Source: Auanema rhodensis (lineage: Eukaryota > Animalia > Nematoda). From it: a stretch of 64,000 nt of DNA. Shown here piece by piece: positions 19,965 through 32,000 of this stretch. A program made the position numbers and the translations under genes. The notes under the pieces are model-generated. The model did not search any database, had not been told where the DNA came from, and saw only the letters and a program-made list of their open reading frames with translations. Position 1 is the first letter of the stretch. Each line of letters begins with the position of its first letter. The stretch is from contig OZ059894.1 of NCBI GenBank assembly GCA_964057225.1, positions 13,578,001 through 13,642,000 of the forward strand. The letters are read 5' to 3'.

Positions 19965-21924
19965 TCTACCACTGAGAATAGACCGTTGGTTCTCGAAATG
20001 AACCTTCTGAAATAAGTTTGTTTTACTTCAGATTTGATGGCAGAAAATACTTTTTATATATTTTATTTCCGAATATTTTGAATCAATCAAGACTAGAAGT
20101 CGTATAAAAGCAAAATAAGGAAATCGTTATGAATTAATCGGATTTTCAAATACAGTTAGAGACACATGTTCATCGTTTTTTTCTTCGAACACTTCCTCTT
20201 TTAATTTCTTTTTTGATTTAAAATAGTTTAGTTGTTTAGACTAATGTGTTGTTTTTCAAGATTCTTTTTAAAAATGATTCATTTCAAACATGTACAAATG
20301 ATTTTATAATCAAAACGGTTTCATGTCATCGTCGACAATTTGAATAGGTTAAAGTAAGACATTCAATTAATGTCCAAAGGCGAGAAATGGTAAACGTCAA
20401 GGACATGCATCTCTCTCTCTCACTAGCCTTTTCACTCTTTAAGTTTTCTCTCAATTACGCTTATTTTGTATGTCTGGCTTGAAGAAACCTCAAAATATCT
20501 TATAAATCGAATTTATATTTCTGTTCTGTTTTCACATAAGTTTCAAGAAATATTTACATAATAGCTGAAGTTATTATAACAAAAAGTTAATTCACCTCTT
20601 GAGTTACAGGACTTAATATAGCTCTTTTATAGCTATATCTCTGAGGAATTCTTAGTGGTAATTGTGAATTAAGAGTAATTCCAAGAATAGATTGTATGGC
20701 ACATAGTAATAATATTGAAATTATCTAAAATTATAATATATAATAGTATAGTTAATGATAAAATATTTGAAATCTTACTGTTTCTCTGGAAATCATTTAC
20801 ACAGGAAATAATAGAAAATCTCTGATTAAACAACAAAATGAAAATCTATAATGATTTGGTCAGAAAATGGAAAGATGTTTAAAGTAAAATCGGAAAAAAG
20901 GTGTTTTGAAACGAAAAAAATAAAGAAATAAGAAGAAGATGGTATCTAACTAAGGCCAAAAGGACAACGATACTTTAAGGAACTGAATGAAACAGTCTGC
21001 CCCAACCAACAAGGAAGATTTTCTTTTCATGATCTCGTATTCGATTAGGTTTTCTGAGGGACATAATAGTTAAAAAGAGTATCTATGCGGTTAGGAAAAA
21101 CATAAAATTCTCTTGTTATATGATAAATGTAGAAAACTATTCAATGAGTTGTATACATTATACTTCAAAAAACCTGGAAACTTGTTAGAATTCAAAATTT
21201 CAAAAGAAAAAAGTTGAAGAAAGATAGAAGGAGAGACCTGAAAATCAATGTTTAGTAGTATAGAAAAAAGAAAGAATGGGATAAGGAAATAAATAAAGAG
21301 GAATTCTGAAAGACTTTAACATTTTGAAAACAAGAGAAAAAACATGAAGTAAATGCTGTATTGAAGTTAAGGTCAGAAAAAGAGAACAATTTCTTTTCTG
21401 ATGCTTCTTCTGGCACCAAAGTCACATAAATAAGAAGCCACAACGGCTGTGGGTTTGCGACATGAATGTCTGAATGAGAAGTATTAGATAAAAAATTCAA
21501 GACATAAATTATTTGAATCATAATAAGTTGAAATCGAAAATCAATGTGTTCTTGAATCAAAGAATTTGCAACACAACAGGATCATGAGGGAAACACTTTT
21601 GCCTTAAGTATAATTGAAAATTATTCCTTTCTTACTTGTCATAGTTTGTCTGAAATTTTTTTGTATTCGGATGATGTTCTTTGATTGTTTTCTTCAGTAG
21701 AAATCATAGATCAGAACATTTATACAGAGACAATCCTTCATTCAGATCTTGTCAATGAACAGAGAAAGCTCATCAAAGGTTGATGTGGTCATAAGGGAGA
21801 TGAAATAGCAGAGTCTCAATAGCAATACTGATAAGAAGAAGAACAAAGCGAAAGCCTTGAGACGTTGGAAGAGAAAGATATTGCATGTTGATTGAAATTA
21901 GATGCAGTGAAAAGAAGAAAAGAA

Positions 21925-21925
21925 C

Positions 21926-21973
<48 letters not shown>

Positions 21974-21995
21974 AGAAAGAGAGAGAGATGAAGAG
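21925..21995. repeat. (AG)n microsatellite
   Basis: Directly visible. Confidence 0.95.
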
Positions 21996-24286
21996 AAAAA
22001 CAAAATTTTTTATGATATCACAGAGATATACAAATATATTTAAGAAAATAGACATAAAGAGTTTTGATATTTTGTTCTCTGATGATCTCGCATGCTTTAC
22101 TTTAGTTTTGTTCAAACTACAGTATATCCTAGAAATTAGTTTTTATTTTCCATCATATGATAGTAATTGAAGTACATGGAATAAATATAGAAAAATCGAG
22201 CTTTATGATGACAGATATAGGTTGATGGAGATGCATATCACATCAAATAGACGAGAATCATCATGTGATATGATATGATAAATGTTTTTTCAAGGAAGAC
22301 TGCTGTAGATCACATTGAGACATTCATGAAACTAGGTGTTAACTTCGAAACCGAAGTTGAAGGATGCTATCAAAGTTGAAGAATAGATTCATTAAATGGC
22401 AAACATGTAATTATGAATATTGAAAATAAGAATTAAACTTTTTTTTAAAGATTGTTATCGCATCATGTCAGTTTGAAGAATTTTGACTAAACTTCATACA
22501 TTTTGCAATCAAGGCAAAATGTATGAAATTGCCGTTGAAAGCCATAAACATTCTTTTGTGTGAATAAGAGTAGCAGAAGTTCAAATTTGCAACAATATAC
22601 AATAAAATTGGCGAAAATCACAAAAAAAAAGATAGAAGCTTTGAAGGAGGACAAGAATAAAAAAAAGTGAAAGTGTTATTATGTGAGAGCTAAGCTTTAC
22701 ATATAGTATGTATGTATGAAGACTGTGTAAGTATTGCTTTGATGAAATCTTTTTACCTCATTTCTAGGAAAAAAAATATTCACTTTTCAAATATTTTTAG
22801 CTAAAATTTTACTTTCGGCTCGTACTACAAGATGTTCAATTATTCAAAAAAAAATTCAAAAATGTTAAAGAAGAAAGTGGCTTGTTCTTTTGTTCTTATC
22901 CAAGAAGAGGGTTTGTTCTTGACCTCGACACACTAGAGACAGAAGAATTCTGATGTACCGGTTCATGTAAAAGGAAAATGAGATGATAATGATGGGAGTT
23001 TACTTGGTACATCACGAACTAAGTATCTATCAGCATTCGCTTTCAGCCAGATGAAGAATATGTGGCTACCTACGATGATGACAATAGCACATGAACATGA
23101 CATACAGAAGTTCGAAAGTATGAATAAGAGATAATCCAGATTCATTTTCTATCTGCTTGTATGTTCAGGATAAGCTTAAAGGTAAAATGTTCGAAACGCT
23201 TGAAACTTGTTCTAGATATTAGCTCACGAATGTAGAATACAGAGGCAATTATGTTCTTCCCTTGAAAAAAGTTTTTCATTATATCTCCAAAAAAATTATT
23301 GAACAGATACTACTATATGAAAATAATTTGGTTTAGAGAAAAATTGGTTATATGAATCTATGAATCTTACATTTTATTAAATCAAAATTAATTTTTAAAT
23401 TGTATCTATATGATATAATTAGGAGCTATAGATATATAAAATAGTGTTAAGAAGTAAAGATGATTGGAAAATTATTATCGATGTCCACAGTTATCCATTA
23501 ATAAGCTTCCAAAAATTGATCAAGAAAACAAGATTTATCTCTCGTAACCACGTGCATGATTACTTACATTTGCACAAAACTGGAACTACTGATTCCAAGC
23601 TATGATTCAGCTTTTTTCTTCAATTTTCTATAAAGTTAATGATTATTATAAATACATCTTCATTTTATCTTTTGTATATTTGTCTGTTTGATTTTATTTA
23701 TATCATTATATCATATCCATCAGCGACTTTCTGCTAGTTTTGCAGATATATTATTATACTTCCGCTAAAGAATGAGCAGAACATCTCCAACATATTTCTT
23801 TATTTGCAGATTATTACTAGTTATGACTTTTGAATGATTTTTTCATGATTTGCACGTGAAACACGTGGATTTGTTAGACTTCCATTGATCATTTATTCGA
23901 TCAGAGAACGTCGAACGGTTGTGCTTCAAGTAGACTTTTTAACTTCCTGATTACTTGATATCTTGAAGTCTAGTCCAAAAAGAAAACAATATACACATAC
24001 GTGTTGAATAAAAAATTTAATTTTCAATATTGAGCTATTTGAATTTTACCAATGAACATTTCTGAATGTGACATTTTCGTAATTATCAAGATGTTATCAG
24101 GAATGTGTCACAAATTTTTATCAATGAATACTTGAAAAAATATATAATTTTTTATAAAAATTAATATATTCGATAAATTTTTAATTTTTTTAAGAAAAAA
24201 CTAAACAAAAAACCCGCAAAAATACACAAAAATATAAAAACTCTTACGAAGATTACCCGATGATGTTACAACTGATGATTATTCAT

Positions 24287-25832
24287 TTAAGGTTGTTCTC
24301 GATTGCTTGAGTTCAGAAAAATATCCATATTCGGGAGAGAATTCATAGGCTGCACTGAAAATATATATTTAGTTTACTCTCGATGAATATTAAATATTAA
24401 TAAAATATTTTAATACATATTAATACCATCCGAAATATAATACGAGGAAGGTTTTTGACAGACTTTTATAATTTTTTGAACTGTCGTCTCACACATGACA
24501 GACTTCATCGTTTGAACCACAAAAAAAACGTAAAAACTGTCTATATATTTGACAAAAAAATGTTTTTCTTCAATAGATCATGTTAAAGTTTTCAAATATT
24601 ACATTGAAAATGTTTAACAAGTAGAGAAATATTAAACATTACTATCATATATGTTGAATCTGAACTCACATGATGTGTTTGAGTCTATGTATACAGAATT
24701 AGAAAACTGTGCTTCATTGTATGATGTATCAATATCCTGGTACTGTAATTCAGCTTCTTGATTAATTGAAATATTAGGTTGAAGAAGAATGTTATCTACT
24801 ATGCACATCTGTGGATCAGGATAAAAATTTGGGCAGAATTGAAAAGAATTTGAAGGTGGTTGATGAGATGGTGGCAATGGAGCACGGAAGCTGGAAGTTT
24901 CATAACTTTGATCTATATTTATATAATCATATATATGAGAATTCTTCTTAGAATCCGTTGTGAATCCATGAATTAATGAAAATTTGCGTCGTTGGTTTCG
25001 TTTTGCCTTCGTCTTCTTCAGTTGGTCCTAGGATAATTAAAATAATTTATGATAAGAAGAATATGTTTTATTGAACTGAAAAACTGTCAAAAGATATATG
25101 TATATATCTTTGTAAAAAAAAGTTTGAAAGAAGGAAAAATGATTAGCTCCGACGAATAAAATAGGAAAGATGAAACTAACATGACATTGCTAGGAAAAAT
25201 GAAGAAAAAAAGAATGAAATACGAAAAAGCGATAGAGAGAACAATGAAAATTCTGAAATCTTGCAGATGTCTCAGAAATATCTTCATGAATTCTAGCAGC
25301 AATATTAGACGCAAATTGATAAAAGTAAAAGTAAGTTACCTTATACTTAGATATTGGAGATAATTTCTTGGCCAATTCAAAATTTATTTTCTTTTGCTCT
25401 TCCATTACTTCAACAGGACTACTTTGCCGTTTAGAATTTCCCTAAATTCATTGTATTGATATTCAAGGTATTGGCAAATTAGAGCACACACCTGACGACC
25501 TTTTCGAGAAGAATGAGTTGAAGATGATTTTGAGCTTTTTAATGGCTGTCTTCTTCCTCTTGATTGCATCGGTGAATCTATGAAGGGCGAAGTTGATCTT
25601 AGTCGATTCAATGGCTCGAAGTAAGCGTAATTCTTATGTCGATGATAATCTACATGAATCATCTGTTGGAGGGAAGAAAATGTTTTCGGTTCTCATAAGA
25701 TATACCTCCTATTACAGATTTTTCGACGTCAACCTCTTCATCGCAGTTTAGTTGAATCGTTGAGCAAGATGATGGAGATGGAGAAGAAGTGTCAGGAGAC
25801 GACAAATCAACCACATTAGTATTTGAATCCAT
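24287..25832 (-). CDS. Uncharacterised Ser-rich protein with a basic (possible NLS) segment
   Basis: Spliced model MDSNTNVVDLSSPD...EKS-MIHVDYHR...RKGRQ-GNSKRQSSPVEVMEEQKKINFELAKKLSPISKYK-DQLKKTKAKRNQRRKFS...PPSHQPP...NTS-LQPMNS...REQP*. It links four ORF-track fragments through ~50-nt GT-AG introns. The 3' end is uncertain. Confidence 0.6.
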
Positions 25833-27003
25833 AATATAAGAATAAACTACACCGTCTGTATTAACGAGATGAGACTTGATAAAATCTAAAAAACCTGAAA
25901 ATGACCACGGCACTTCATCTTATCAGTGTTTCAGCTTTGAGCGACAGCTCCGACAATTGTAGATTTCAATGAAGCATCGCTGGAGCCAAAAAAGCGTTTT
26001 TACCTCCCTTTTTTTGCTAGTTTTTTCTTTCTTCACAGACACATCTATTTCTTATCATATGAATAAGGTTCTATTTTCTCATAAAAATATCTTTAAATAC
26101 ATTGTATTAACAAATAGGACGAGATCAGATTATTGCTCAACTTCAACAAAAAAAGGTTTTTATTGAAACATTAGTTTGTTATTACTTTAATTAACTAAAA
26201 CTATTACAACTTTATAAACATGATAAGGTATACAATATCCAATTTAAGAGCAAAAACAAGCATAATTTTAAAAAGTTCAAGTTTGCAATTTTCCAGTTTA
26301 CACTACTACAAATTAGATCTGCAAAATCGTGACTCAGCCGTTTAAGAAATGATAGAGGGATGGAAGTGATGGAGGGAAGTACTTCTAGCAGTTTATTCCA
26401 AAAACTTTCTTGACAACTTTCTTCTCTTTCACATTAACTAGTGTAACAAATTTTATTTATTTTGGGTCGTATCATTGAACGATTATAACTATTGCATTAA
26501 TTTAAGTGCAATAATTTTTATTTTAATTTGCTTCATTTCAATTTGATCATTTTTATAATTCTTCTTCATTTATTTATCAATGCGTGTTATTCACATTGCA
26601 ATTGAATTTTAATATATTATAATATTATCCTTTATCTTATCTTATAACTACTTCTATTGTTTGCATACGCCTATCAATGTTCTGGATTTACACGTTTATT
26701 TCCTTCCAAAATAGCCATTATTCTTTCACCTTATGAAAGGTTTTGATATCGTTATTTAAATTTCATATTAATATAATGTAACCGAAAAAATAGGACAAAT
26801 TTTCAAATAATCTATTAATATTTTATCTTTTACATTGCTCAATTACAAAAAATATATCATTTCATTAATATTTCCTTATTCTAGTGTATTTTCTCTCTTA
26901 ATAGCTATATAAATAGCTTTCTCTATCAAACTTCACGTAACTCTCACGTAAGGTTCACGTGAGAGATGTATACATATAACCCACTCCGCCTACATTATGT
27001 ATT

Positions 27004-27012
27004 ATTGCATCA
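27004..27012. promoter_or_regulatory. C/EBP-ATF composite (AARE/CARE-type) element upstream of the bZIP gene
   Basis: ATTGCATCA (= TGATGCAAT), an exact match to the ATF4-C/EBP consensus, ~200 nt upstream of the non-coding first exon at 27210-27282. Confidence 0.45.
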
Positions 27013-27521
27013 CACGCCCTGTCGCTTACACGATGGACGACAAACGCACCAGCGTCGCGTCGCCATTTCGGCTCGGTCAAATCGATTGATTTCTTATTAA
27101 GATTCTTTTGATATGACATAATCAGATGATTTTAAACTTATGTAGTGAAATGGCTTATCGTGTTTATCATTTTCTCTGTATTTTGTCGTCACTTAATTCG
27201 TCATTTCAGTTTCAAACTTTTGTGATCCTTTGGATTTCCTTAGCAACTTGCTTTTACAACTTCTTACTGTTCCAATAAACGAAGTAAGTTTTTTTTTATA
27301 ACTTTATCCTATTATATTCATATTTCATTTTACTAGTTTGTGTATTCAATTTTTAAAATCGTTTTCCCACATTTTATTAAAAATGACGTGCATTAAGTAC
27401 AATGATGATAAGCTTAGAGCCTGCTTATTTTCTTTATTCTGATTTCAACCGGTTCCTCATCATATTTATGTTATATCAAATTTGCGTTTCACAGATATTT
27501 TATGATATTACAATTTACAGA

Positions 27522-28077
27522 ATGTCTTCGCTTGAATGCACTGCACCATTTGAAGAATTGCTTAGTAGCAACAACTGTTTGAGCTTGGCTCAAGAAAGCG
27601 AGTGGGGTGTTTGGAGTGACTCGGAAAACTGCAGCATCTCCCTTGCCGTAAGTGTTTAATGTTGGATATTATTTTATAATAAATTTTTTTCAGGCCAACG
27701 CACAGAGAGTTCGTTGTACTCAACCAAACCCGTCAACTACCCCTCCACCCGAAAGCAAGTGTGTTTTTAAGTGGGCCTACGCCACCACCTCCGCCGCTAA
27801 TACCTGCTCTTCAACCAATACTTCCACTATGCCAAGCTCCTGTTCCGTAAGTTTTTAATTATTAAACTGATATTATCTTTATTAATTGCACGGAATCAAG
27901 TCAATTATTTCAGGGAAGCATGTATATCGGTTCCCACATTATCGGAGATTCCGGGTTACATCATCAAGGGCTCAACATGCATGTCGTACCCAAACAGGTA
28001 TGCAAAACTACTTTTATTTATTTTTTAAATTTCGGTGATCTCTAATTATTTCTTTGTTTAAGTGTTTTGTCTACTGA
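27522..28077 (+). CDS. Spliced 125-codon upstream/overlapping ORF of the bZIP gene, or the N-terminus of a long isoform
   Basis: Exons 27522-27647, 27694-27846 and 27914-27997 are all phase 0. Joined to 28063 they read ...VVPKQ-CFVY* with TGA at 28075-28077. Confidence 0.55.
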
Positions 28078-29041
28078 AGAACAGTCGCCATCATCTAAAA
28101 ACAGCAGCACCTCCCCAAATTACTATTATGACTATCCCCAATCTTATACCTCTTTCTCCCCTTCTACCGATCTGTACGTTCTATTTTTATCTAAATGTAT
28201 GATCTTATGATAATATTCTTTTCAGAAATAATTCCGACTTCGGTTTCGTTGAACTTACTCACCACAATATCGATGATTTCGCCCAAGATGTTAATGTGTC
28301 CTATAACGCTTTTCCTTGTCAGCAACGTAATAATTGTTTTTATTTCCTTTCTTTATTACTATCTGAATTTCCAGCTTCTGAATTATCCACCTTAAGTTCT
28401 GAGGCTGCTACTTTCCTTGATGATCTTATTTCCTCCGTTCGTGACGAAATCCAACAAGAAGAACAGGTATCAGGCTTTCTACTATATTCACAAAAACTTA
28501 TCTGTACTTATTAGGTTTCTCTTTCTTCTATGTCTCCATCATCCTCCACCTGTTCTGGTAAATCCGAACCTTTGATATTAACCCCTGAGCACCCTGTTAC
28601 TATCATTGGGGAAGATGGGCATGAGTACAAAGTTGTTCTGCAACCTGTCATGAAATCTTCTGCTAAGAGGAAATCAAGTTCTTCTATGCAAGTAAGTTTT
28701 AGATAGATATTGAAATCGCTAATCTCTTTATCTAGAGCCCTCCACCCAAGCGTGCTCCGGGAGTTTGCCTCTCTTATTTTACTGACGAGGAAATAGCTGA
28801 ACGGAAAAAGGAGCAAAATCGTGTTGCTGCTCGACGATACCGTGATAAAATACGTGATACTCGAGATTCAGAAAAGGACGTAAGTCTTTATAAAGATAAG
28901 AACTAATTCATCATGACATCATTCTTTTTTTAGGAGAAAGTTCGACTTGTCTCTCGAAATGCCTATCTGAGAGAAGAAGCAACTCGCATCGAAAAGGAGA
29001 TTGCAACATTAAAATCATTAATCTTCAATTTTGTTCATTGA
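27981..29041 (+). CDS. zip-3: bZIP transcription factor of the ATF4/ATF5-related nematode ZIP-3 type (~250 aa from ATG 27981; start uncertain)
   Basis: MSYPNSVLSTEEQSPSS...TPEHPVTIIGEDGHEYKVVLQP...SPPPKRAPGVCLSYFTDEEIAERKKEQNRVAARRYRDKIRD...RNAYLREEATRIEKEIATLKSLIF. The basic region is NxxAAxRYR and the zipper resembles C. elegans ZIP-3 as recalled. Stop TGA 29039-29041. Confidence 0.75.
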
Positions 29042-32000
29042 GTTCTTTTCAATTAATTCTATGTAAATTTGATTGATATTTTATACTTGTTTACTGTAAT
29101 AATCTATAGTTAAGCATAAGATGCCCTTTGTTCACTGTTATACCCAATTCTGCTGCTGCTGTTTCATGTTTCATGTAATATCATTATTATTATTACTATT
29201 ATCATTTCACAAATAATAAAAATCTTTGTAGAAATATATAATGTTTCAATGCTGGTCAAGAAATGAATAAGAAAACACATTTTGCAAAAAGATCATTAGA
29301 AGTTTAAAGGTGGCTCACAAATATAATTAGATGGAACGTGTTGAACCATTTTTAATTTAGTTTCCTTTTCCTTTTAGGGATCAAGATCATATTGCTAATA
29401 TATTTCTTCTGAAGATACACATCTTGCTTGTAACTACTTCTTGATCAAATATCCCTAATCCTACATGAAGATAACAAAAAATATGTTATCATATATAATA
29501 TGTGAGTAGTATTATAGAAATATTTCACATTACAGCTGTTACATTTAATTTCTGAATTTTGTTTAATAATAGCTAAATGAGTATTTTAATTATTTATACA
29601 TTTATTTGTATAAAAAATGAGATAAATGCTGCTGAAAAATGGTAATCTTTTTCGGTTTTAATTTGCCTACTAATTACATTCTTTGCTGACCCCATATGTG
29701 CCCCTGGCTCTCGTTTAATACAAATTTCTCTTCTAGCTTTATCCTCATGTGCCTTTCCTTTCAAGACAAAAACGAATAAAATAAAGAAACATTTTGCATG
29801 AAGTTGTCATTCAAATTTTTTTTATTTTTTGACAGAATTGCTTACGAGTTTTTTCAGTTTTAATAAATATTGTTCGTCTTCTTCTTATTTTTCATATTTT
29901 TCATTCTATAAGAATACAATTTCAAGTAATTAAGTGAAAGTCTTAGATAGAGTTTCATATTTTTTACAAAATATAATCTTTGAATAATAGGTTTCAAATA
30001 TAATAATTTCAACAATCACATTCCTTTTGAGGAAAGCAAAATATCTAATTTCCCATGGCCGCAAACTGTCTATGAAAGTATTCGGGAAGATTCTCTGAAA
30101 ACCTATCATAAGATATTGCTTATTCCAAATTTCAGTATAATAACGTTTGAAGTTTCTATATTTTATTTCTGTAAATCCCATTATCATTCTAAATAATTTT
30201 TGAGTTCAAAATTTAATAGTGAATATAGGTATGAATAATATTATTATAATCTTGATAAATCATATAAAATATTTATATGATAACTTAACATATAATATAA
30301 CATTAACTATATACTTTCAATCATTTGCATTCTTTTAACGTTAAATTTTCTAATATATTACATACATAGATGAATAAAGAGATATAGAGAATACTTTTTT
30401 ATACATATGAGCATGAGAAGAGAGAGGTATCTTTCTAGAATACTTGAATATCTGCATATTAAACTTATTTTTAAAATTTTATTCAATTGATTTCATTATT
30501 CAATGACTAGAATCAGTAAGAAAATGGAAGATTCTACTGAATATTTCTTTGATCTAAAACTACTTCTCGGTTCAGAAAAGATATATAAATGAAGAAAATC
30601 CGCCTACATAGATATGTATTAAGCCTTCTTAATTGCCTTTATTTAACCTTTTGCAATATTTATTTTAATCTTAAAATCATCATTAAATGTTTTTATTTGA
30701 AACTTTGAAAATTGAAAATTAAATGTAAAAAATGAGCGTAGGAAATGTTTCTTCAAACACGCTCCTCCCATTTTTTAAAAAATAATAATCTTTCAATTCT
30801 TAATTGCATTGATTCGTTTTTTTTGTGTAAAGTTGCAAAGTTTTAATGAGGTTGCTATGCCTCTATAACATTTTTATAATTTTTGATCATCATCAACATC
30901 ATCATCATTGATATTCAAAAGGATAATAGATATAATGATAGATCAATCCCAACTTTTCTGTTTAAAACCAAATAATAATGATAAAACATTGAAAAATTAC
31001 ATGGGAGTGTACTTGAAAGTCTGTATAGTATAGAATATTTGTAATGATACTTATAAAGATTTTTCGTATGAAAGTATATTGCCCCTAGCTATTTATACTT
31101 CTTCGTCTATCTTACAATGGCCAATTTTAAATCCCAGATTTATATAGATCGAGATATTCTATTCTAGTTTACGTATTATTTTATTTTACTTGAAAATTAT
31201 TTAGGATTGAAGAAATTATAGTTAGTTAAACTATTCATTTTAATTTGTTAATTTACATCACAATCAAACTCTTTGTTTTCTTTTTTTTAAAGTAACTATA
31301 AAAAAATTAAAACGTTTTTCACAAAGTTCATTCATTTCGAAATTGCTTCCAAAAAATATGTAAAATTTGAGAGTAAAGTAATAAAAGTTGAATGAACAGA
31401 TAGACAGAGATAGTAACATCCTTATTTAATTATTTTCCCCTTTTTGAATCAAATCATTTAGAATAAATTGTTCCTTATTTTGAAAAAAAAATCAACAAAG
31501 TTTGAACTATTTTGGTTAATTCTTCTTTGATTACTTACAAATGTCTCCCTTGATAACATTCAATTTGAACAGAAAATTACCCTCATTCTTGTTTGTTGAT
31601 TTAAAGAACGACATGTCCAAAAGCTTTGGAACAAAGATATCTTGCAGCTTTTATTGAGTTGTTCTACATGATAGAACAGTAAATGTCGTCAATATTGTGT
31701 AAGAATTATAATACTTGAGAGTAGGCTTGTAACATTATTTCAAAGACGTTTTCCATAATCAGATTTCTTTCTCCAAATTCCTTTATTGAATGAGATAATA
31801 GGCATGTTTGAGATAATACTATATTCATCTTCAAAATGCTGACACGAAGATTTGAGATCCTTTCAACTAACTGAAAGCCCGACCAAATTTTGAAGATCCA
31901 ATATGAGATACTGGGTTTGAGAATGAGGAAGGCGTGAAGATTTGATGACGTCAATTCATACACATTGAATACGTACGTATGGATAACGACGTCTTCAATT

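What the first reader, a model, noticed from the sequence alone, without database searches (positions are those of the whole stretch)
27522..28084. Dual-coding 5' region of the ZIP-3-like bZIP gene: spliced 125-codon overlapping uORF with a 22-nt acceptor or +1 frame switch
Seen: the first AUG (27522) opens frame A through three phase-0 exons. With the best acceptor (TTTAAG|28063) it stops at TAC-TGA (28075-28077), out of frame with the bZIP. The bZIP frame B (+1) is itself open from 27583 across the same exons (~100 codons, including SGPTPPPPPLIP), but its first AUG is 27981, inside frame A. A weak second acceptor 22 nt downstream (GAACAG|28085) would fuse A to B in frame, as would a +1 shift at TAC-TGA-A. 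Known: ATF4/ATF5 and C. elegans atf-4 and zip-2 are controlled by overlapping uORFs, and antizyme uses a +1 frameshift at a stop codon. Inference: this is a stress-responsive translational or splicing switch with an unusually long, intron-containing uORF that may encode its own protein.
Basis: partly seen in the sequence, partly recalled or inferred. Interest (0 to 1): 0.8.

Follow-up and report, generated by a model that had tools for sequence, protein, structure and literature searches.

The report
Conserved frameshift site in nematode zip-9
This worm gene for a bZIP transcription factor (the counterpart of the unstudied C. elegans gene zip-9) is written in two overlapping reading frames that switch at a 10-letter U-rich motif identical in twelve nematode sequences, so the factor is probably made only when ribosomes slip frame there, as was recently proposed for the related gene zip-2.

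Summary
Spliced RNA contigs from four runs match the window exactly and use the 28063 acceptor. The main mRNA therefore carries a 125-codon frame-A ORF (AUG 27522 to UGA 28075-77) overlapping the bZIP frame B (+1).

The 28085 acceptor is absent from the contigs and has no AG in the closest relative found, Auanema sp. JU1783.

Orthologues show that the conserved protein follows frame A up to ...KCVF and frame B from LSGPxPPPPPL onward. The switch lies in exon 2 at GUGUUUUUAA (27761-27770). This motif is invariant in 12 sequences and is the longest invariant run in the mRNA.

The gene is the orthologue of C. elegans zip-9, not zip-3. Frame-B AUGs are not conserved: JU1783 has none before the DNA-binding region. 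In Caenorhabditis, all three codon positions are nearly frozen from 45 nt before the motif to 135 nt after it, and stay well below the frame-B synonymous rate as far as the frame-A stop. That indicates true dual coding.

Best reading (0.55): a site-specific net +1 (−2 or +1) ribosomal frameshift makes a ~365-aa fusion, and unshifted ribosomes make the 125-aa protein. The closest precedent is zip-2 (PNAS 2025).

The scan also flagged a similar +1 bZIP overlap elsewhere in this genome (s1-421359), which I did not check.

The parts
27208..27283 (+). 5' leader exon with no AUG. It begins 2 nt inside a TTTCAG acceptor, so it is probably an SL trans-splice site at 27210.
   Evidence: Joint 27283>27521 in the contigs of all 4 runs. 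No ATG lies before 27522 in the mRNA. The trans-splicing reading is inference.
27521..27647 (+). Exon 1. AUG of frame A at 27522-27524 in the context acgaaaAUGU. It encodes the conserved EWGVW motif.
27694..27846 (+). Exon 2, uninterrupted in the RNA. It holds the frame switch. Frame A gives ...RVRCTQPNPSTTPPPESKCVF and frame B gives LSGPTPPPPPLIPALQ...
   Evidence: Contig pieces 27694-27846. Orthologue alignment.
27761..27770 (+). Invariant motif GUGUUUUUAA, the candidate slip site. Frame A codons: UGU 27760-62, GUU 27763-65, UUU 27766-68, AAG 27769-71. Frame B codons: GUG 27761-63, UUU 27764-66, UUA 27767-69. The -1 frame reads UAA at 27768-70.
   Evidence: Identical in the 11 sequences and in a 12th, L014. 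It is the longest invariant run (10 nt; next longest 5 nt) in the 9-species mRNA alignment.
27782..27797 (+). C-rich tract CCACCACCUCCGCCGC, starting 13 nt after the U-run. It encodes the poly-Pro stretch of frame B. A role as a protein-bound frameshift stimulator is speculative.
   Evidence: C-rich at a similar spacing in most species, weakest in L012. No stable RNA structure 3' of the site. The analogy to the PRRSV CCCANCUCC motif comes from PMC4937337.
27914..27997 (+). Exon 3, dual-coding. It contains the first frame-B AUG at 27981-83, which is not conserved.
28063..28173 (+). Exon 4, using acceptor TTTAAG|28063. The frame-A stop UGA is at 28075-28077.
   Evidence: Joint 27997>28063 in all 4 runs
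28083..28084 (+). There is no support for its use.
   Evidence: Not in the contigs. No AG at the homologous place in Auanema sp. JU1783.
28226..29041 (+). Exons 5-9 in frame B only: 28226-28326, 28375-28466, 28515-28691, 28736-28879 (basic region) and 28934-29041 (zipper, with stop UGA at 29039-41). The 3' UTR runs to about 29226.

Best explanation
The gene is the orthologue of C. elegans zip-9, an ATF4-like bZIP factor found across rhabditine (clade V) nematodes.

Proposed mechanism:
1. Ribosomes start at the first AUG of the mRNA (27522) and read frame A.
2. At, or within about 45 nt before, the invariant GUG_UUU_UUA_A motif in exon 2 (27761-27770), a fraction of them move into frame B, a net +1 change.
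3. This could be a -2 slip. Phe-tRNA would re-pair from UUU to UUU and Val-tRNA from GUU to GUG, giving ...KCVF-LSGP.... Or it could be a +1 slip of Phe-tRNA from UUU to UUA, giving ...KCVF-SGP....
4. The shifted ribosomes make a trans-frame protein of about 365 aa. It carries the conserved frame-A N-terminus (EWGVW, RVRC, KCVF) and the frame-B body ending in the bZIP domain.
5. Ribosomes that do not shift finish a separate, conserved 125-aa frame-A protein at UGA 28075.

What is shown: the mRNA structure, the two conserved frames, the position of the switch, and the invariance of the motif.

What is inferred: that the switch is ribosomal, its direction (-2 or +1), its efficiency, and any stress regulation by analogy with zip-2.
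For: 1. mRNA structure. Spliced contigs identical to the genome show exon 2 uninterrupted and the 28063 acceptor.
2. Frame use in orthologues. Proteins and mRNAs of Auanema sp. JU1783, C. elegans, five other Caenorhabditis and several strongylids match frame A up to KCVF and frame B from (V)FLSGP onward.
3. Motif conservation. GTGTTTTTAA is identical in 12 sequences. It is the longest invariant run in a 1,439-column, 9-species mRNA alignment, at 10 nt against 5 nt for the next longest.
4. Codon-position rates in four Caenorhabditis species.
- From -225 to -46 nt the pattern is frame-A-only, with the third position fast at 0.28-0.36 apart from one conserved window.
- From -45 to +135 nt all three positions are frozen at 0.03-0.09.
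- Rates then stay mostly low as far as the frame-A stop.
- After that stop the pattern is pure frame B, with the third position at 0.3-0.5.
5. Strongylid pair L004/L012. The overlap evolves like frame-B coding sequence.
6. Frame-B AUGs are not conserved. The first is at +51, +28, +61/+64, +91 and +272 codons in different species. JU1783 has none before the basic region.
7. Start codon. AUG_A is the first AUG of every mRNA that reaches it, mostly as aaaAUG. One to four further AUGs precede the motif, which makes leaky scanning to frame B unlikely.
8. Public gene models. Those for JU1783 and C. auriculariae bridge the frames with improbable 40-nt and 31-nt 'introns' ending at TTTTTAAG. The window's RNA contigs, and the mRNA contigs of C. 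elegans and seven unnamed species, keep this stretch unspliced.
9. Precedent. Genetics on zip-2 indicate a +1 shift from a 146-codon overlapping ORF into the bZIP frame, independent of the main-ORF AUG (PMC11831180).
Against: - There is no direct evidence of shifted translation: no Ribo-seq and no junction peptide.
- Strict dual coding (V-F in frame A, V-F-L in frame B) could by itself freeze most of the 10 nt.
- No stable 3' RNA structure was found.
- The codon after UUU (AAG/AAA/AAC) is not a classic slow codon for a +1 shift.
- A -2 frameshift has no precedent in cellular genes that I know of (own knowledge).
- Caenorhabditis keeps frame-B AUGs (MIMD...), from which C. elegans annotates a 291-aa protein. 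Independent initiation may therefore contribute there.
- Contigs cannot exclude minor splice isoforms.
Confidence: 0.55

Rival explanations
1. Frame A is only an inhibitory overlapping ORF with a conserved peptide. The bZIP protein is initiated independently in frame B, either at AUG 27981 or at a near-cognate codon such as the invariant GUG (27761-63). No trans-frame fusion is made.
For: - The invariant motif contains a frame-B GUG with A at -3.
- Caenorhabditis keeps frame-B AUGs at +61 to +66 codons, and C. elegans annotates a 291-aa product from them.
- In zip-2, loss of the overlapping-ORF AUG activates translation from the main-ORF AUG (PMC11831180).
Against: - Frame-B AUGs are absent before the basic region in JU1783, and the first lies at +272 codons in L012.
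- Scanning ribosomes would have to pass AUG_A, mostly in an aaaAUG context, plus 1-4 further AUGs.
- There is no short upstream uORF to allow reinitiation.
- This reading gives the TF no use for the conserved frame-A N-terminus.
Confidence: 0.2
2. Frameshifting is diffuse, as in the zip-2 model. Rare +1 shifts occur anywhere in the roughly 105-codon overlap when elongation is slowed, with no dedicated slip site.
For: - The zip-2 authors favour shifts at many points in the overlap and call it a rare rather than programmed event (PMC11831180).
- Frame A stays open for 56-84 codons after the motif in all species.
Against: - The frame-A-only pattern upstream of -45 nt and the frame-B conservation immediately after the motif place the switch in a narrow interval.
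- One 10-nt block is uniquely invariant.
- The upstream openness of frame B is not above chance.
Confidence: 0.14
3. One reading: a minor acceptor at 28085 removes 22 nt and fuses frame A to the bZIP frame.
For: The arithmetic is correct, giving a 357-aa in-frame product.
Against: - Only 27997>28063 appears in the contigs of 4 runs.
- JU1783 has no AG at the homologous place.
- The fusion would replace the conserved frame-B segment LSGP...PNSVL with frame-A sequence.
Confidence: 0.03
4. An antizyme-like +1 shift at the frame-A stop (UAC-UGA-A, 28072-28078).
For: It would be frame-correct, and +1 shifts at stop codons are known from antizyme.
Against: - The stop context is not conserved (GCA-UAA-A in JU1783, other contexts elsewhere).
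- Orthologue conservation follows frame B from 58 codons upstream of the stop.
Confidence: 0.04
5. An artefact, or a recently broken gene: an assembly indel in the T5 run, or a pseudogene.
For: The switch sits at a homopolymer, which is a typical place for an indel.
Against: - RNA contigs carry the same T5 with 0 differences.
- The same T5 and the same two-frame layout occur in 12 sequences from at least three clades, including nine mRNA contigs.
Confidence: 0.01

Closest known systems
C. elegans zip-2 overlapping-ORF to main-ORF +1 frameshift (Kniazeva & Ruvkun, PNAS 2025, PMC11831180)
   Same: - Both are nematode bZIP genes.
- A long AUG-initiated overlapping ORF (146 codons there, 125 here) has the bZIP frame at +1.
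- Both frames are conserved.
- The main-ORF AUG is dispensable or variable.
- The overlapping-ORF AUG is the first start on the mRNA.
   Different: - This is a different gene. Its C. elegans orthologue is zip-9 on chromosome V, whose overlapping ORF starts MSLF..., whereas zip-2's starts MYHA....
- Here one invariant U-rich motif marks the switch, and the arrangement extends beyond Caenorhabditis to Auanema and strongylids.
- For zip-2 no slip site was defined, and the authors call the event a rare shift.
- There is no experimental evidence for the present gene.
Arterivirus (PRRSV) nsp2 -2/-1 frameshift signal GG_GUU_UUU with a 3' C-rich motif bound by nsp1beta/PCBP (PMC4937337)
   Same: - The zero-frame slip codons GUU_UUU are the same.
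- There is no stable 3' RNA structure.
- A C-rich tract follows after a short spacer (11 nt there, about 13 nt here).
- The -1 frame meets an immediate stop.
   Different: - This is a cellular gene.
- The upstream letters are GU rather than GG. That would allow better P-site re-pairing, GUU to GUG.
- No trans-activator is known.
- The C-rich tract also encodes a conserved poly-Pro stretch.
- Neither the -2 direction nor any role of the tract has been tested.
ATF4/GCN4-type uORF control (C. elegans atf-4: PMC8857226, PMC4225475)
   Same: - It is an ATF4-like basic region (AARRYR).
- An upstream ORF overlaps the bZIP frame out of frame.
   Different: - There is no short reinitiation-permissive uORF.
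- The overlapping ORF is 125 codons long and conserved as protein.
- The main-frame AUG is not conserved.
Antizyme +1 frameshifting
   Same: - Two partially overlapping ORFs, with the functional product needing a +1 frame change.
   Different: - The shift site is not at the zero-frame stop.
- The zero frame continues for 58 more codons.
- There is no similarity in sequence or signals.

Membership tests
bZIP transcription factors (Pfam bZIP_1 / bZIP_2) | A basic region followed by a leucine zipper that scores above Pfam's gathering threshold. | tested here: inconclusive
   Exon 8 and exon 9 hit bZIP_1 separately, at 19.4 and 15.9 bits against a cut-off of 27.6. The full orthologues P0001 and P0045 reach 26.7 and 24.5 bits. 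The signature KKEQNRVAARRYRDK and heptad leucines are visible. The spliced window protein could not be submitted whole because it has no reference.
zip-9 orthologues (C. elegans A0A1I6CMA8 / NP_001380203.1) | Closest similarity to zip-9 family proteins over the bZIP region and the upstream motifs (PVTIIGEDGxEYKVV, DDF, EWGVW, KCVF). | tested here: met
   Exon 8 finds the family, with 20 hits at E<=0.001. The profile search recovers clade V members. The C. elegans member is P0045, named zip-9 in the table of PMC12521169. The motifs align. A formal reciprocal-best-hit test was not run.
zip-9 orthologues | The shared two-frame gene layout with the GUGUUUUUAA motif. | tested here: met
zip-2-type overlapping-ORF/main-ORF frameshift sensors | A long AUG-initiated ORF overlapping the bZIP frame, which lies at +1. 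| tested here: met
zip-2-type overlapping-ORF/main-ORF frameshift sensors | Both overlapping frames under selection. | tested here: met
   In Caenorhabditis the frame-B third-position rate is 0.06-0.12 in the overlap against 0.35-0.44 downstream. Frame-A openness has p = 0.0003-0.15 per species. No extra frame-A constraint is seen in the L004/L012 pair. The window/JU1783 pair gives no clear frame pattern.
zip-2-type overlapping-ORF/main-ORF frameshift sensors | The bZIP product does not depend on the main-frame AUG. | tested here: inconclusive
   Only comparative evidence is available: frame-B AUG positions vary, and JU1783 has none before the basic region. No genetic test exists.
zip-2-type overlapping-ORF/main-ORF frameshift sensors | Activation by inhibition of translation elongation. 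| not testable with these tools
   Needs reporters or Ribo-seq with hygromycin or elongation mutants.
ATF4/GCN4 delayed-reinitiation control | A short 5' uORF followed by an inhibitory uORF overlapping a conserved main AUG. | tested here: not met
   No AUG precedes AUG_A in any mRNA. The main-frame AUG is not conserved.
Antizyme-type +1 frameshift at a stop codon | A shift at the codon next to the zero-frame stop, with a conserved stop context. | tested here: not met
   The switch lies 58 codons upstream of the stop, and the stop context varies.
Arterivirus-type protein-stimulated -2 PRF | A GUU_UUU slip site with an unstructured C-rich element about 9-11 nt 3' of it. | tested here: inconclusive
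   GUU_UUU is present and invariant. A C-rich tract starts 13 nt 3' of it, and no structure was found. The published optimum spacing is 9-11 nt. The tract also encodes poly-Pro.
Arterivirus-type protein-stimulated -2 PRF | A -2 direction and dependence on a trans-acting protein. | not testable with these tools
   Needs junction-peptide mass spectrometry and reporter assays.
Alternative 3' splice-site frame switch | Use of the second acceptor in RNA, and its conservation. | tested here: not met
   Only 28063 is seen, and JU1783 has no AG there. Minor isoforms cannot be excluded from contigs.

The most novel reading that the evidence does not exclude
GU_GUU_UUU_A in zip-9 orthologues is a -2 programmed ribosomal frameshift site in a cellular gene, which to my knowledge would be the first. 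It would be stimulated by a host poly(C)-binding protein on the C-rich tract 13 nt downstream, as in arteriviruses. It would act as a conserved switch that decides between a 125-aa protein and a full bZIP transcription factor in response to the state of translation.
Probability: 0.2. Interest if true: 0.88.

Novelty: new member of a known kind. Interest (0 to 1): 0.72.

Why it matters
- **A second case, with an address.** zip-9 is essentially unstudied: the name appears in only four papers of the library, and in the one I opened only as a table entry. If the reading holds, zip-2 is not a one-off. A second bZIP factor would be gated by ribosomal frame change, here with a precise and deeply conserved slip site that can be mutated cleanly. 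zip-2 lacks such a site.
- **A testable question.** It would make the question of how worms sense translation stress by frameshifting directly testable in C. elegans, and it offers a candidate cellular -2 or +1 signal.
- **Annotation.** Public gene models for this gene are patched in several species, including Auanema sp. JU1783, C. auriculariae and probably H. contortus. The patches are spurious mini-introns or frame jumps. In C. elegans the gene is split into two proteins. Annotators should treat it as a recoded gene.

Tried and rejected
- **Assembly indel in the T5 run.** Rejected: the RNA contigs are identical to the genome, and the same T5 occurs in 12 sequences.
- **A real 40-nt mini-intron** (GTCAAC...TTTTTAAG, as in the JU1783 model). 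Rejected: exon 2 is continuous in this species' contigs and in nine other mRNA contigs. Removing it would also delete the conserved KCVFLS.
- **IRE1/XBP1-type unconventional splicing.** CUGCAGC at 27629-35 resembles an IRE1 loop, but I found no partner site at a distance of 1 mod 3. This was checked by eye only and was not pursued.
- **Other alternative donors and acceptors** that would remove 1 mod 3 nt. I found none around exons 1-3 by eye.
- **A stable 3' stimulatory RNA structure.** Not found: z-scores were between -1.2 and +2.0 in 7 species, against mononucleotide shuffles only.
- **Frame B open upstream of the motif as a signal.** Not significant.
- **Cross-clade amino-acid scores to separate the frames.** Inconclusive: both frames score, because they share the same nucleotides.
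- **Clade IV relative.** The Aphelenchoides fujianensis locus shows no motif and no EWGVW or VFLSG. I detected the layout only in clade V.
- **Technical limits.** The spliced window protein has no reference, so it was not sent whole to any search tool. Exon 8 (window:28736-28879) was used instead. The zip-2 supplement is not held, so I could not check whether zip-2 carries the same motif.
Full report
**1. The observation**

I rebuilt the gene from the sequence.
- Exons 27522-27647, 27694-27846 and 27914-27997 are all phase 0.
- With acceptor TTTAAG|28063, frame A ends CFVY-UGA at 28075-77, giving 125 codons.
- The bZIP frame B lies at +1. It is open from 27583 to 29039-41, and its first AUG is 27981.
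- An acceptor at 28085 would give an in-frame 357-aa product.

Four public runs from one study hold about half of the sampled words of the stretch. Their contigs were laid on window 26000-29800.
- They match with 0 other letters and 0 gaps.
- They skip nine GT..AG introns, so they are RNA-derived.
- The intron 3 joint is 27997>28063, printed as 27995>28061 'cut +2'.
- Exon 2 is continuous.
- A leader exon, about 27208-27283, is spliced to 27521 and contains no AUG.

- There is no assembly indel.
- The 28085 acceptor is not the main one.
- The mRNA starts upstream of AUG 27522.

Contigs cannot show minor isoforms.

**2. Where the frames really switch**

The spliced protein has no reference, so I searched with exon 8 alone (window:28736-28879). 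It found 20 relatives.

The best hit is P0001, from Auanema sp. JU1783, with 81% identity over that exon. P0001 and the others match the window as follows:
- frame A for ...EWGVW...RVRCxQP...KCVF;
- frame B for (VF)LSGPxPPPPPL...APVPEACIS...PNSxLS.

The conserved protein therefore changes frame inside exon 2. It does not change at intron 3 or at the UGA.

The JU1783 locus (L001) has the same AGCAAGTGTGTTTTTAAGTGGGCC. Its rebuilt mRNA shows:
- a frame-A ORF of 119 codons, ending CFVA-UAA at the same place in exon 4;
- no AG at the position homologous to 28083-84;
- Leu where the window has the frame-B AUG 27981;
- no frame-B Met before the basic region (RYRDKMRE).

Several public gene models bridge or mix the two frames.
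- The JU1783 model bridges them with a 40-nt 'intron' ending at TTTTTAAG.
- The C. auriculariae model uses a 31-nt one.
- From its protein sequence, the H. contortus model appears to jump frames upstream of the motif. I did not check its DNA.
- C. remanei and C. briggsae models run on in frame A past the motif.

**3. Breadth of the arrangement**

I examined nine spliced mRNAs:
- the window mRNA;
- C. elegans (L006);
- three Caenorhabditis transcript contigs (L008-L010);
- L014;
- three strongylid-like contigs (L004, L011, L012).

I also examined three genomic loci: JU1783, C. auriculariae and O. dentatum.

All twelve sequences carry GTGTTTTTAA. The other features below come from the mRNAs and the rebuilt JU1783 mRNA.
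- AUG_A is the first AUG of the mRNA and mostly sits in an aaaAUG context.
- It is followed by 63-87 frame-A codons.
- Then comes GTGTTTTTAA. Frame A reads xGU GUU UUU AAx and frame B reads GUG UUU UUA.
- Frame A continues for 52-86 more codons.

In a 9-species mRNA alignment of 1,439 columns, this 10-mer is the longest invariant run. The next longest runs are 5 nt, even in the basic region.

The first frame-B AUG after the motif lies at +51, +28, +61, +64, +91 and +272 codons in different species.

An Aphelenchoides relative (clade IV) shows no motif.

The C. elegans member is P0045 (NP_001380203.1, A0A1I6CMA8; chr V 10,942,654-10,943,785). The table in review PMC12521169 names it zip-9. Its frame-A ORF is annotated separately as a 172-aa protein, P0036, with no Pfam domain.

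**4. Which frames are under selection**

Among four Caenorhabditis species, measured in nt from the motif:

| Segment | Pattern | Rates |
|---|---|---|
| -225 to -46 | frame-A-only coding, third position fastest (one conserved window aside) | 0.28-0.36 |
| -45 to +135 | all three codon positions frozen | 0.03-0.09 |
| +135 to the frame-A stop (+267) | mostly low | one window reaches 0.27 at the frame-A third position |
| after the frame-A stop | pure frame-B coding | third position 0.3-0.5 |

The overlap is therefore truly dual-constrained in that genus.

In the L004/L012 pair, the overlap evolves like frame-B coding (third-position rate 0.31 against second-position 0.16). L012 has no frame-B AUG for 272 codons, so frame B is apparently translated there without one.

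Resampling gives two results.
- Frame A staying open after the motif is unlikely given the frame-B protein (p = 0.0003-0.15 per species). My own Fisher combination of one species per clade gives about 0.003.
- Frame B being open before the motif is not unusual (p = 0.27-0.64).

**5. Mechanism**

The data place the A-to-B transition within about 45 nt ending at the motif.

A ribosomal frameshift is the simplest route.
- **A -2 slip.** Phe-tRNA re-pairs perfectly (UUU to UUU) and Val-tRNA keeps two of three pairs (GUU to GUG). The product reads KCVF-LSGP.
- **A +1 slip.** Phe-tRNA moves from UUU to UUA, and the product reads KCVF-SGP.

The invariant U at 27762 is a synonymous site in frame A. 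It is needed for GUG, so it weakly favours the -2 slip or translation of the GUG codon.

The zero-frame GUU_UUU equals the arterivirus -2/-1 slip codons. That signal also lacks RNA structure and uses a C-rich element 11 nt downstream, bound by PCBP and nsp1beta (PMC4937337). Here I found no stable structure. A C-rich tract begins 13 nt after the U-run in most species, but it also encodes the conserved poly-Pro stretch. Its role is speculative.

By the -2 model, the window's product is 67 + 298 = 365 aa. Unshifted ribosomes make the 125-aa frame-A protein.

The ribosomal nature of the switch, its direction, its efficiency and any regulation are all inferred. None of them is shown.

**6. Comparison with what is known**

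Kniazeva & Ruvkun (PMC11831180) showed genetically the following for zip-2.
- A 146-codon overlapping ORF lies at -1 relative to the bZIP ORF.
- Activation by elongation inhibitors does not need the main-ORF AUG.
- Both frames are conserved.
- They propose +1 shifting at unspecified points in the overlap.

The present gene has the same architecture in a different gene, zip-9. It adds a discrete invariant site and conservation across Caenorhabditis, Auanema and strongylids.

In the held library I found no paper linking zip-9 to overlapping ORFs or frameshifting. The held part of the large recoding review lists only antizyme and APC for nematodes.

Other models do not fit:
- **ATF4-type control.** There is no short upstream uORF and no conserved main AUG.
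- **Antizyme-type shifting at the stop.** The switch is not at the stop.
- **The 22-nt splice switch.** It has no RNA support and is not conserved.

**7. Verdict**

Its specific mechanisms and its gene name are not.

The feature is a new member of a known kind: a frameshift-gated bZIP gene, or a cellular programmed frameshift. A less likely reading is that it is a cellular -2 frameshift, which to my knowledge would be the first.

Another note of this scan (s1-421359) reports a similar +1 bZIP overlap elsewhere in the same genome. I could not inspect it.

Noticed in passing
L001:4340-4400 (Auanema sp. JU1783, CAI4223630.1); L002:7470-7520 (C. auriculariae); P0053 (H. contortus); P0013, P0027 (C. 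remanei, C. briggsae): Public gene models of this gene are patched around the frame switch. JU1783 and C. auriculariae use spurious 40-nt and 31-nt introns ending at TTTTTAAG. The H. contortus model appears, from its protein sequence, to jump frames. The C. remanei and C. briggsae models run on in frame A past the motif. In C. elegans the two frames are annotated as separate proteins (P0036, 172 aa; P0045, 291 aa).
   Followed up: partly
window 27041-27202 and 27350-27518: Run X1 has low-depth contigs (2-3x, against 284x for the mRNA contig). They lie upstream of the leader exon and inside the leader intron. The leader exon begins right after a TTTCAG. Together this suggests an outron and SL trans-splicing at about 27210, with the primary transcript starting upstream of 27041.
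   Followed up: no
window 27768-27770: The -1 frame at the motif reads UAA in every species. A -1 slip on GUU_UUU would therefore end at once in a 67-aa product, as with nsp2N of PRRSV.
   Followed up: no
window 21770-22170: There is a long (GA)n/(CT)n simple repeat. The ORF translations read SLSLSL and RERERE.
   Followed up: no
window 25405-25913, minus strand: Two adjacent minus-strand ORFs of 85 and 84 aa are probably exons of a divergently oriented upstream gene. They were not identified.
   Followed up: no
same genome, other pieces (notes s1-421359, s1-397650): Other first-stage notes report a second ATF4-like bZIP frame with no AUG lying +1 to a Cys-rich overlapping ORF, and a zip-3-like bZIP with a 37-codon overlapping uORF. 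The first may be the zip-2 orthologue or a zip-9 paralogue.
   Followed up: no
L013 (Aphelenchoides fujianensis, GCA_024699865.1): This clade IV relative shares the bZIP region and the D..F.DEI...VRAEI motif. It shows no GUGUUUUUAA, EWGVW or VFLSG within 5 kb upstream. The two-frame layout may have arisen within clade V.
   Followed up: partly
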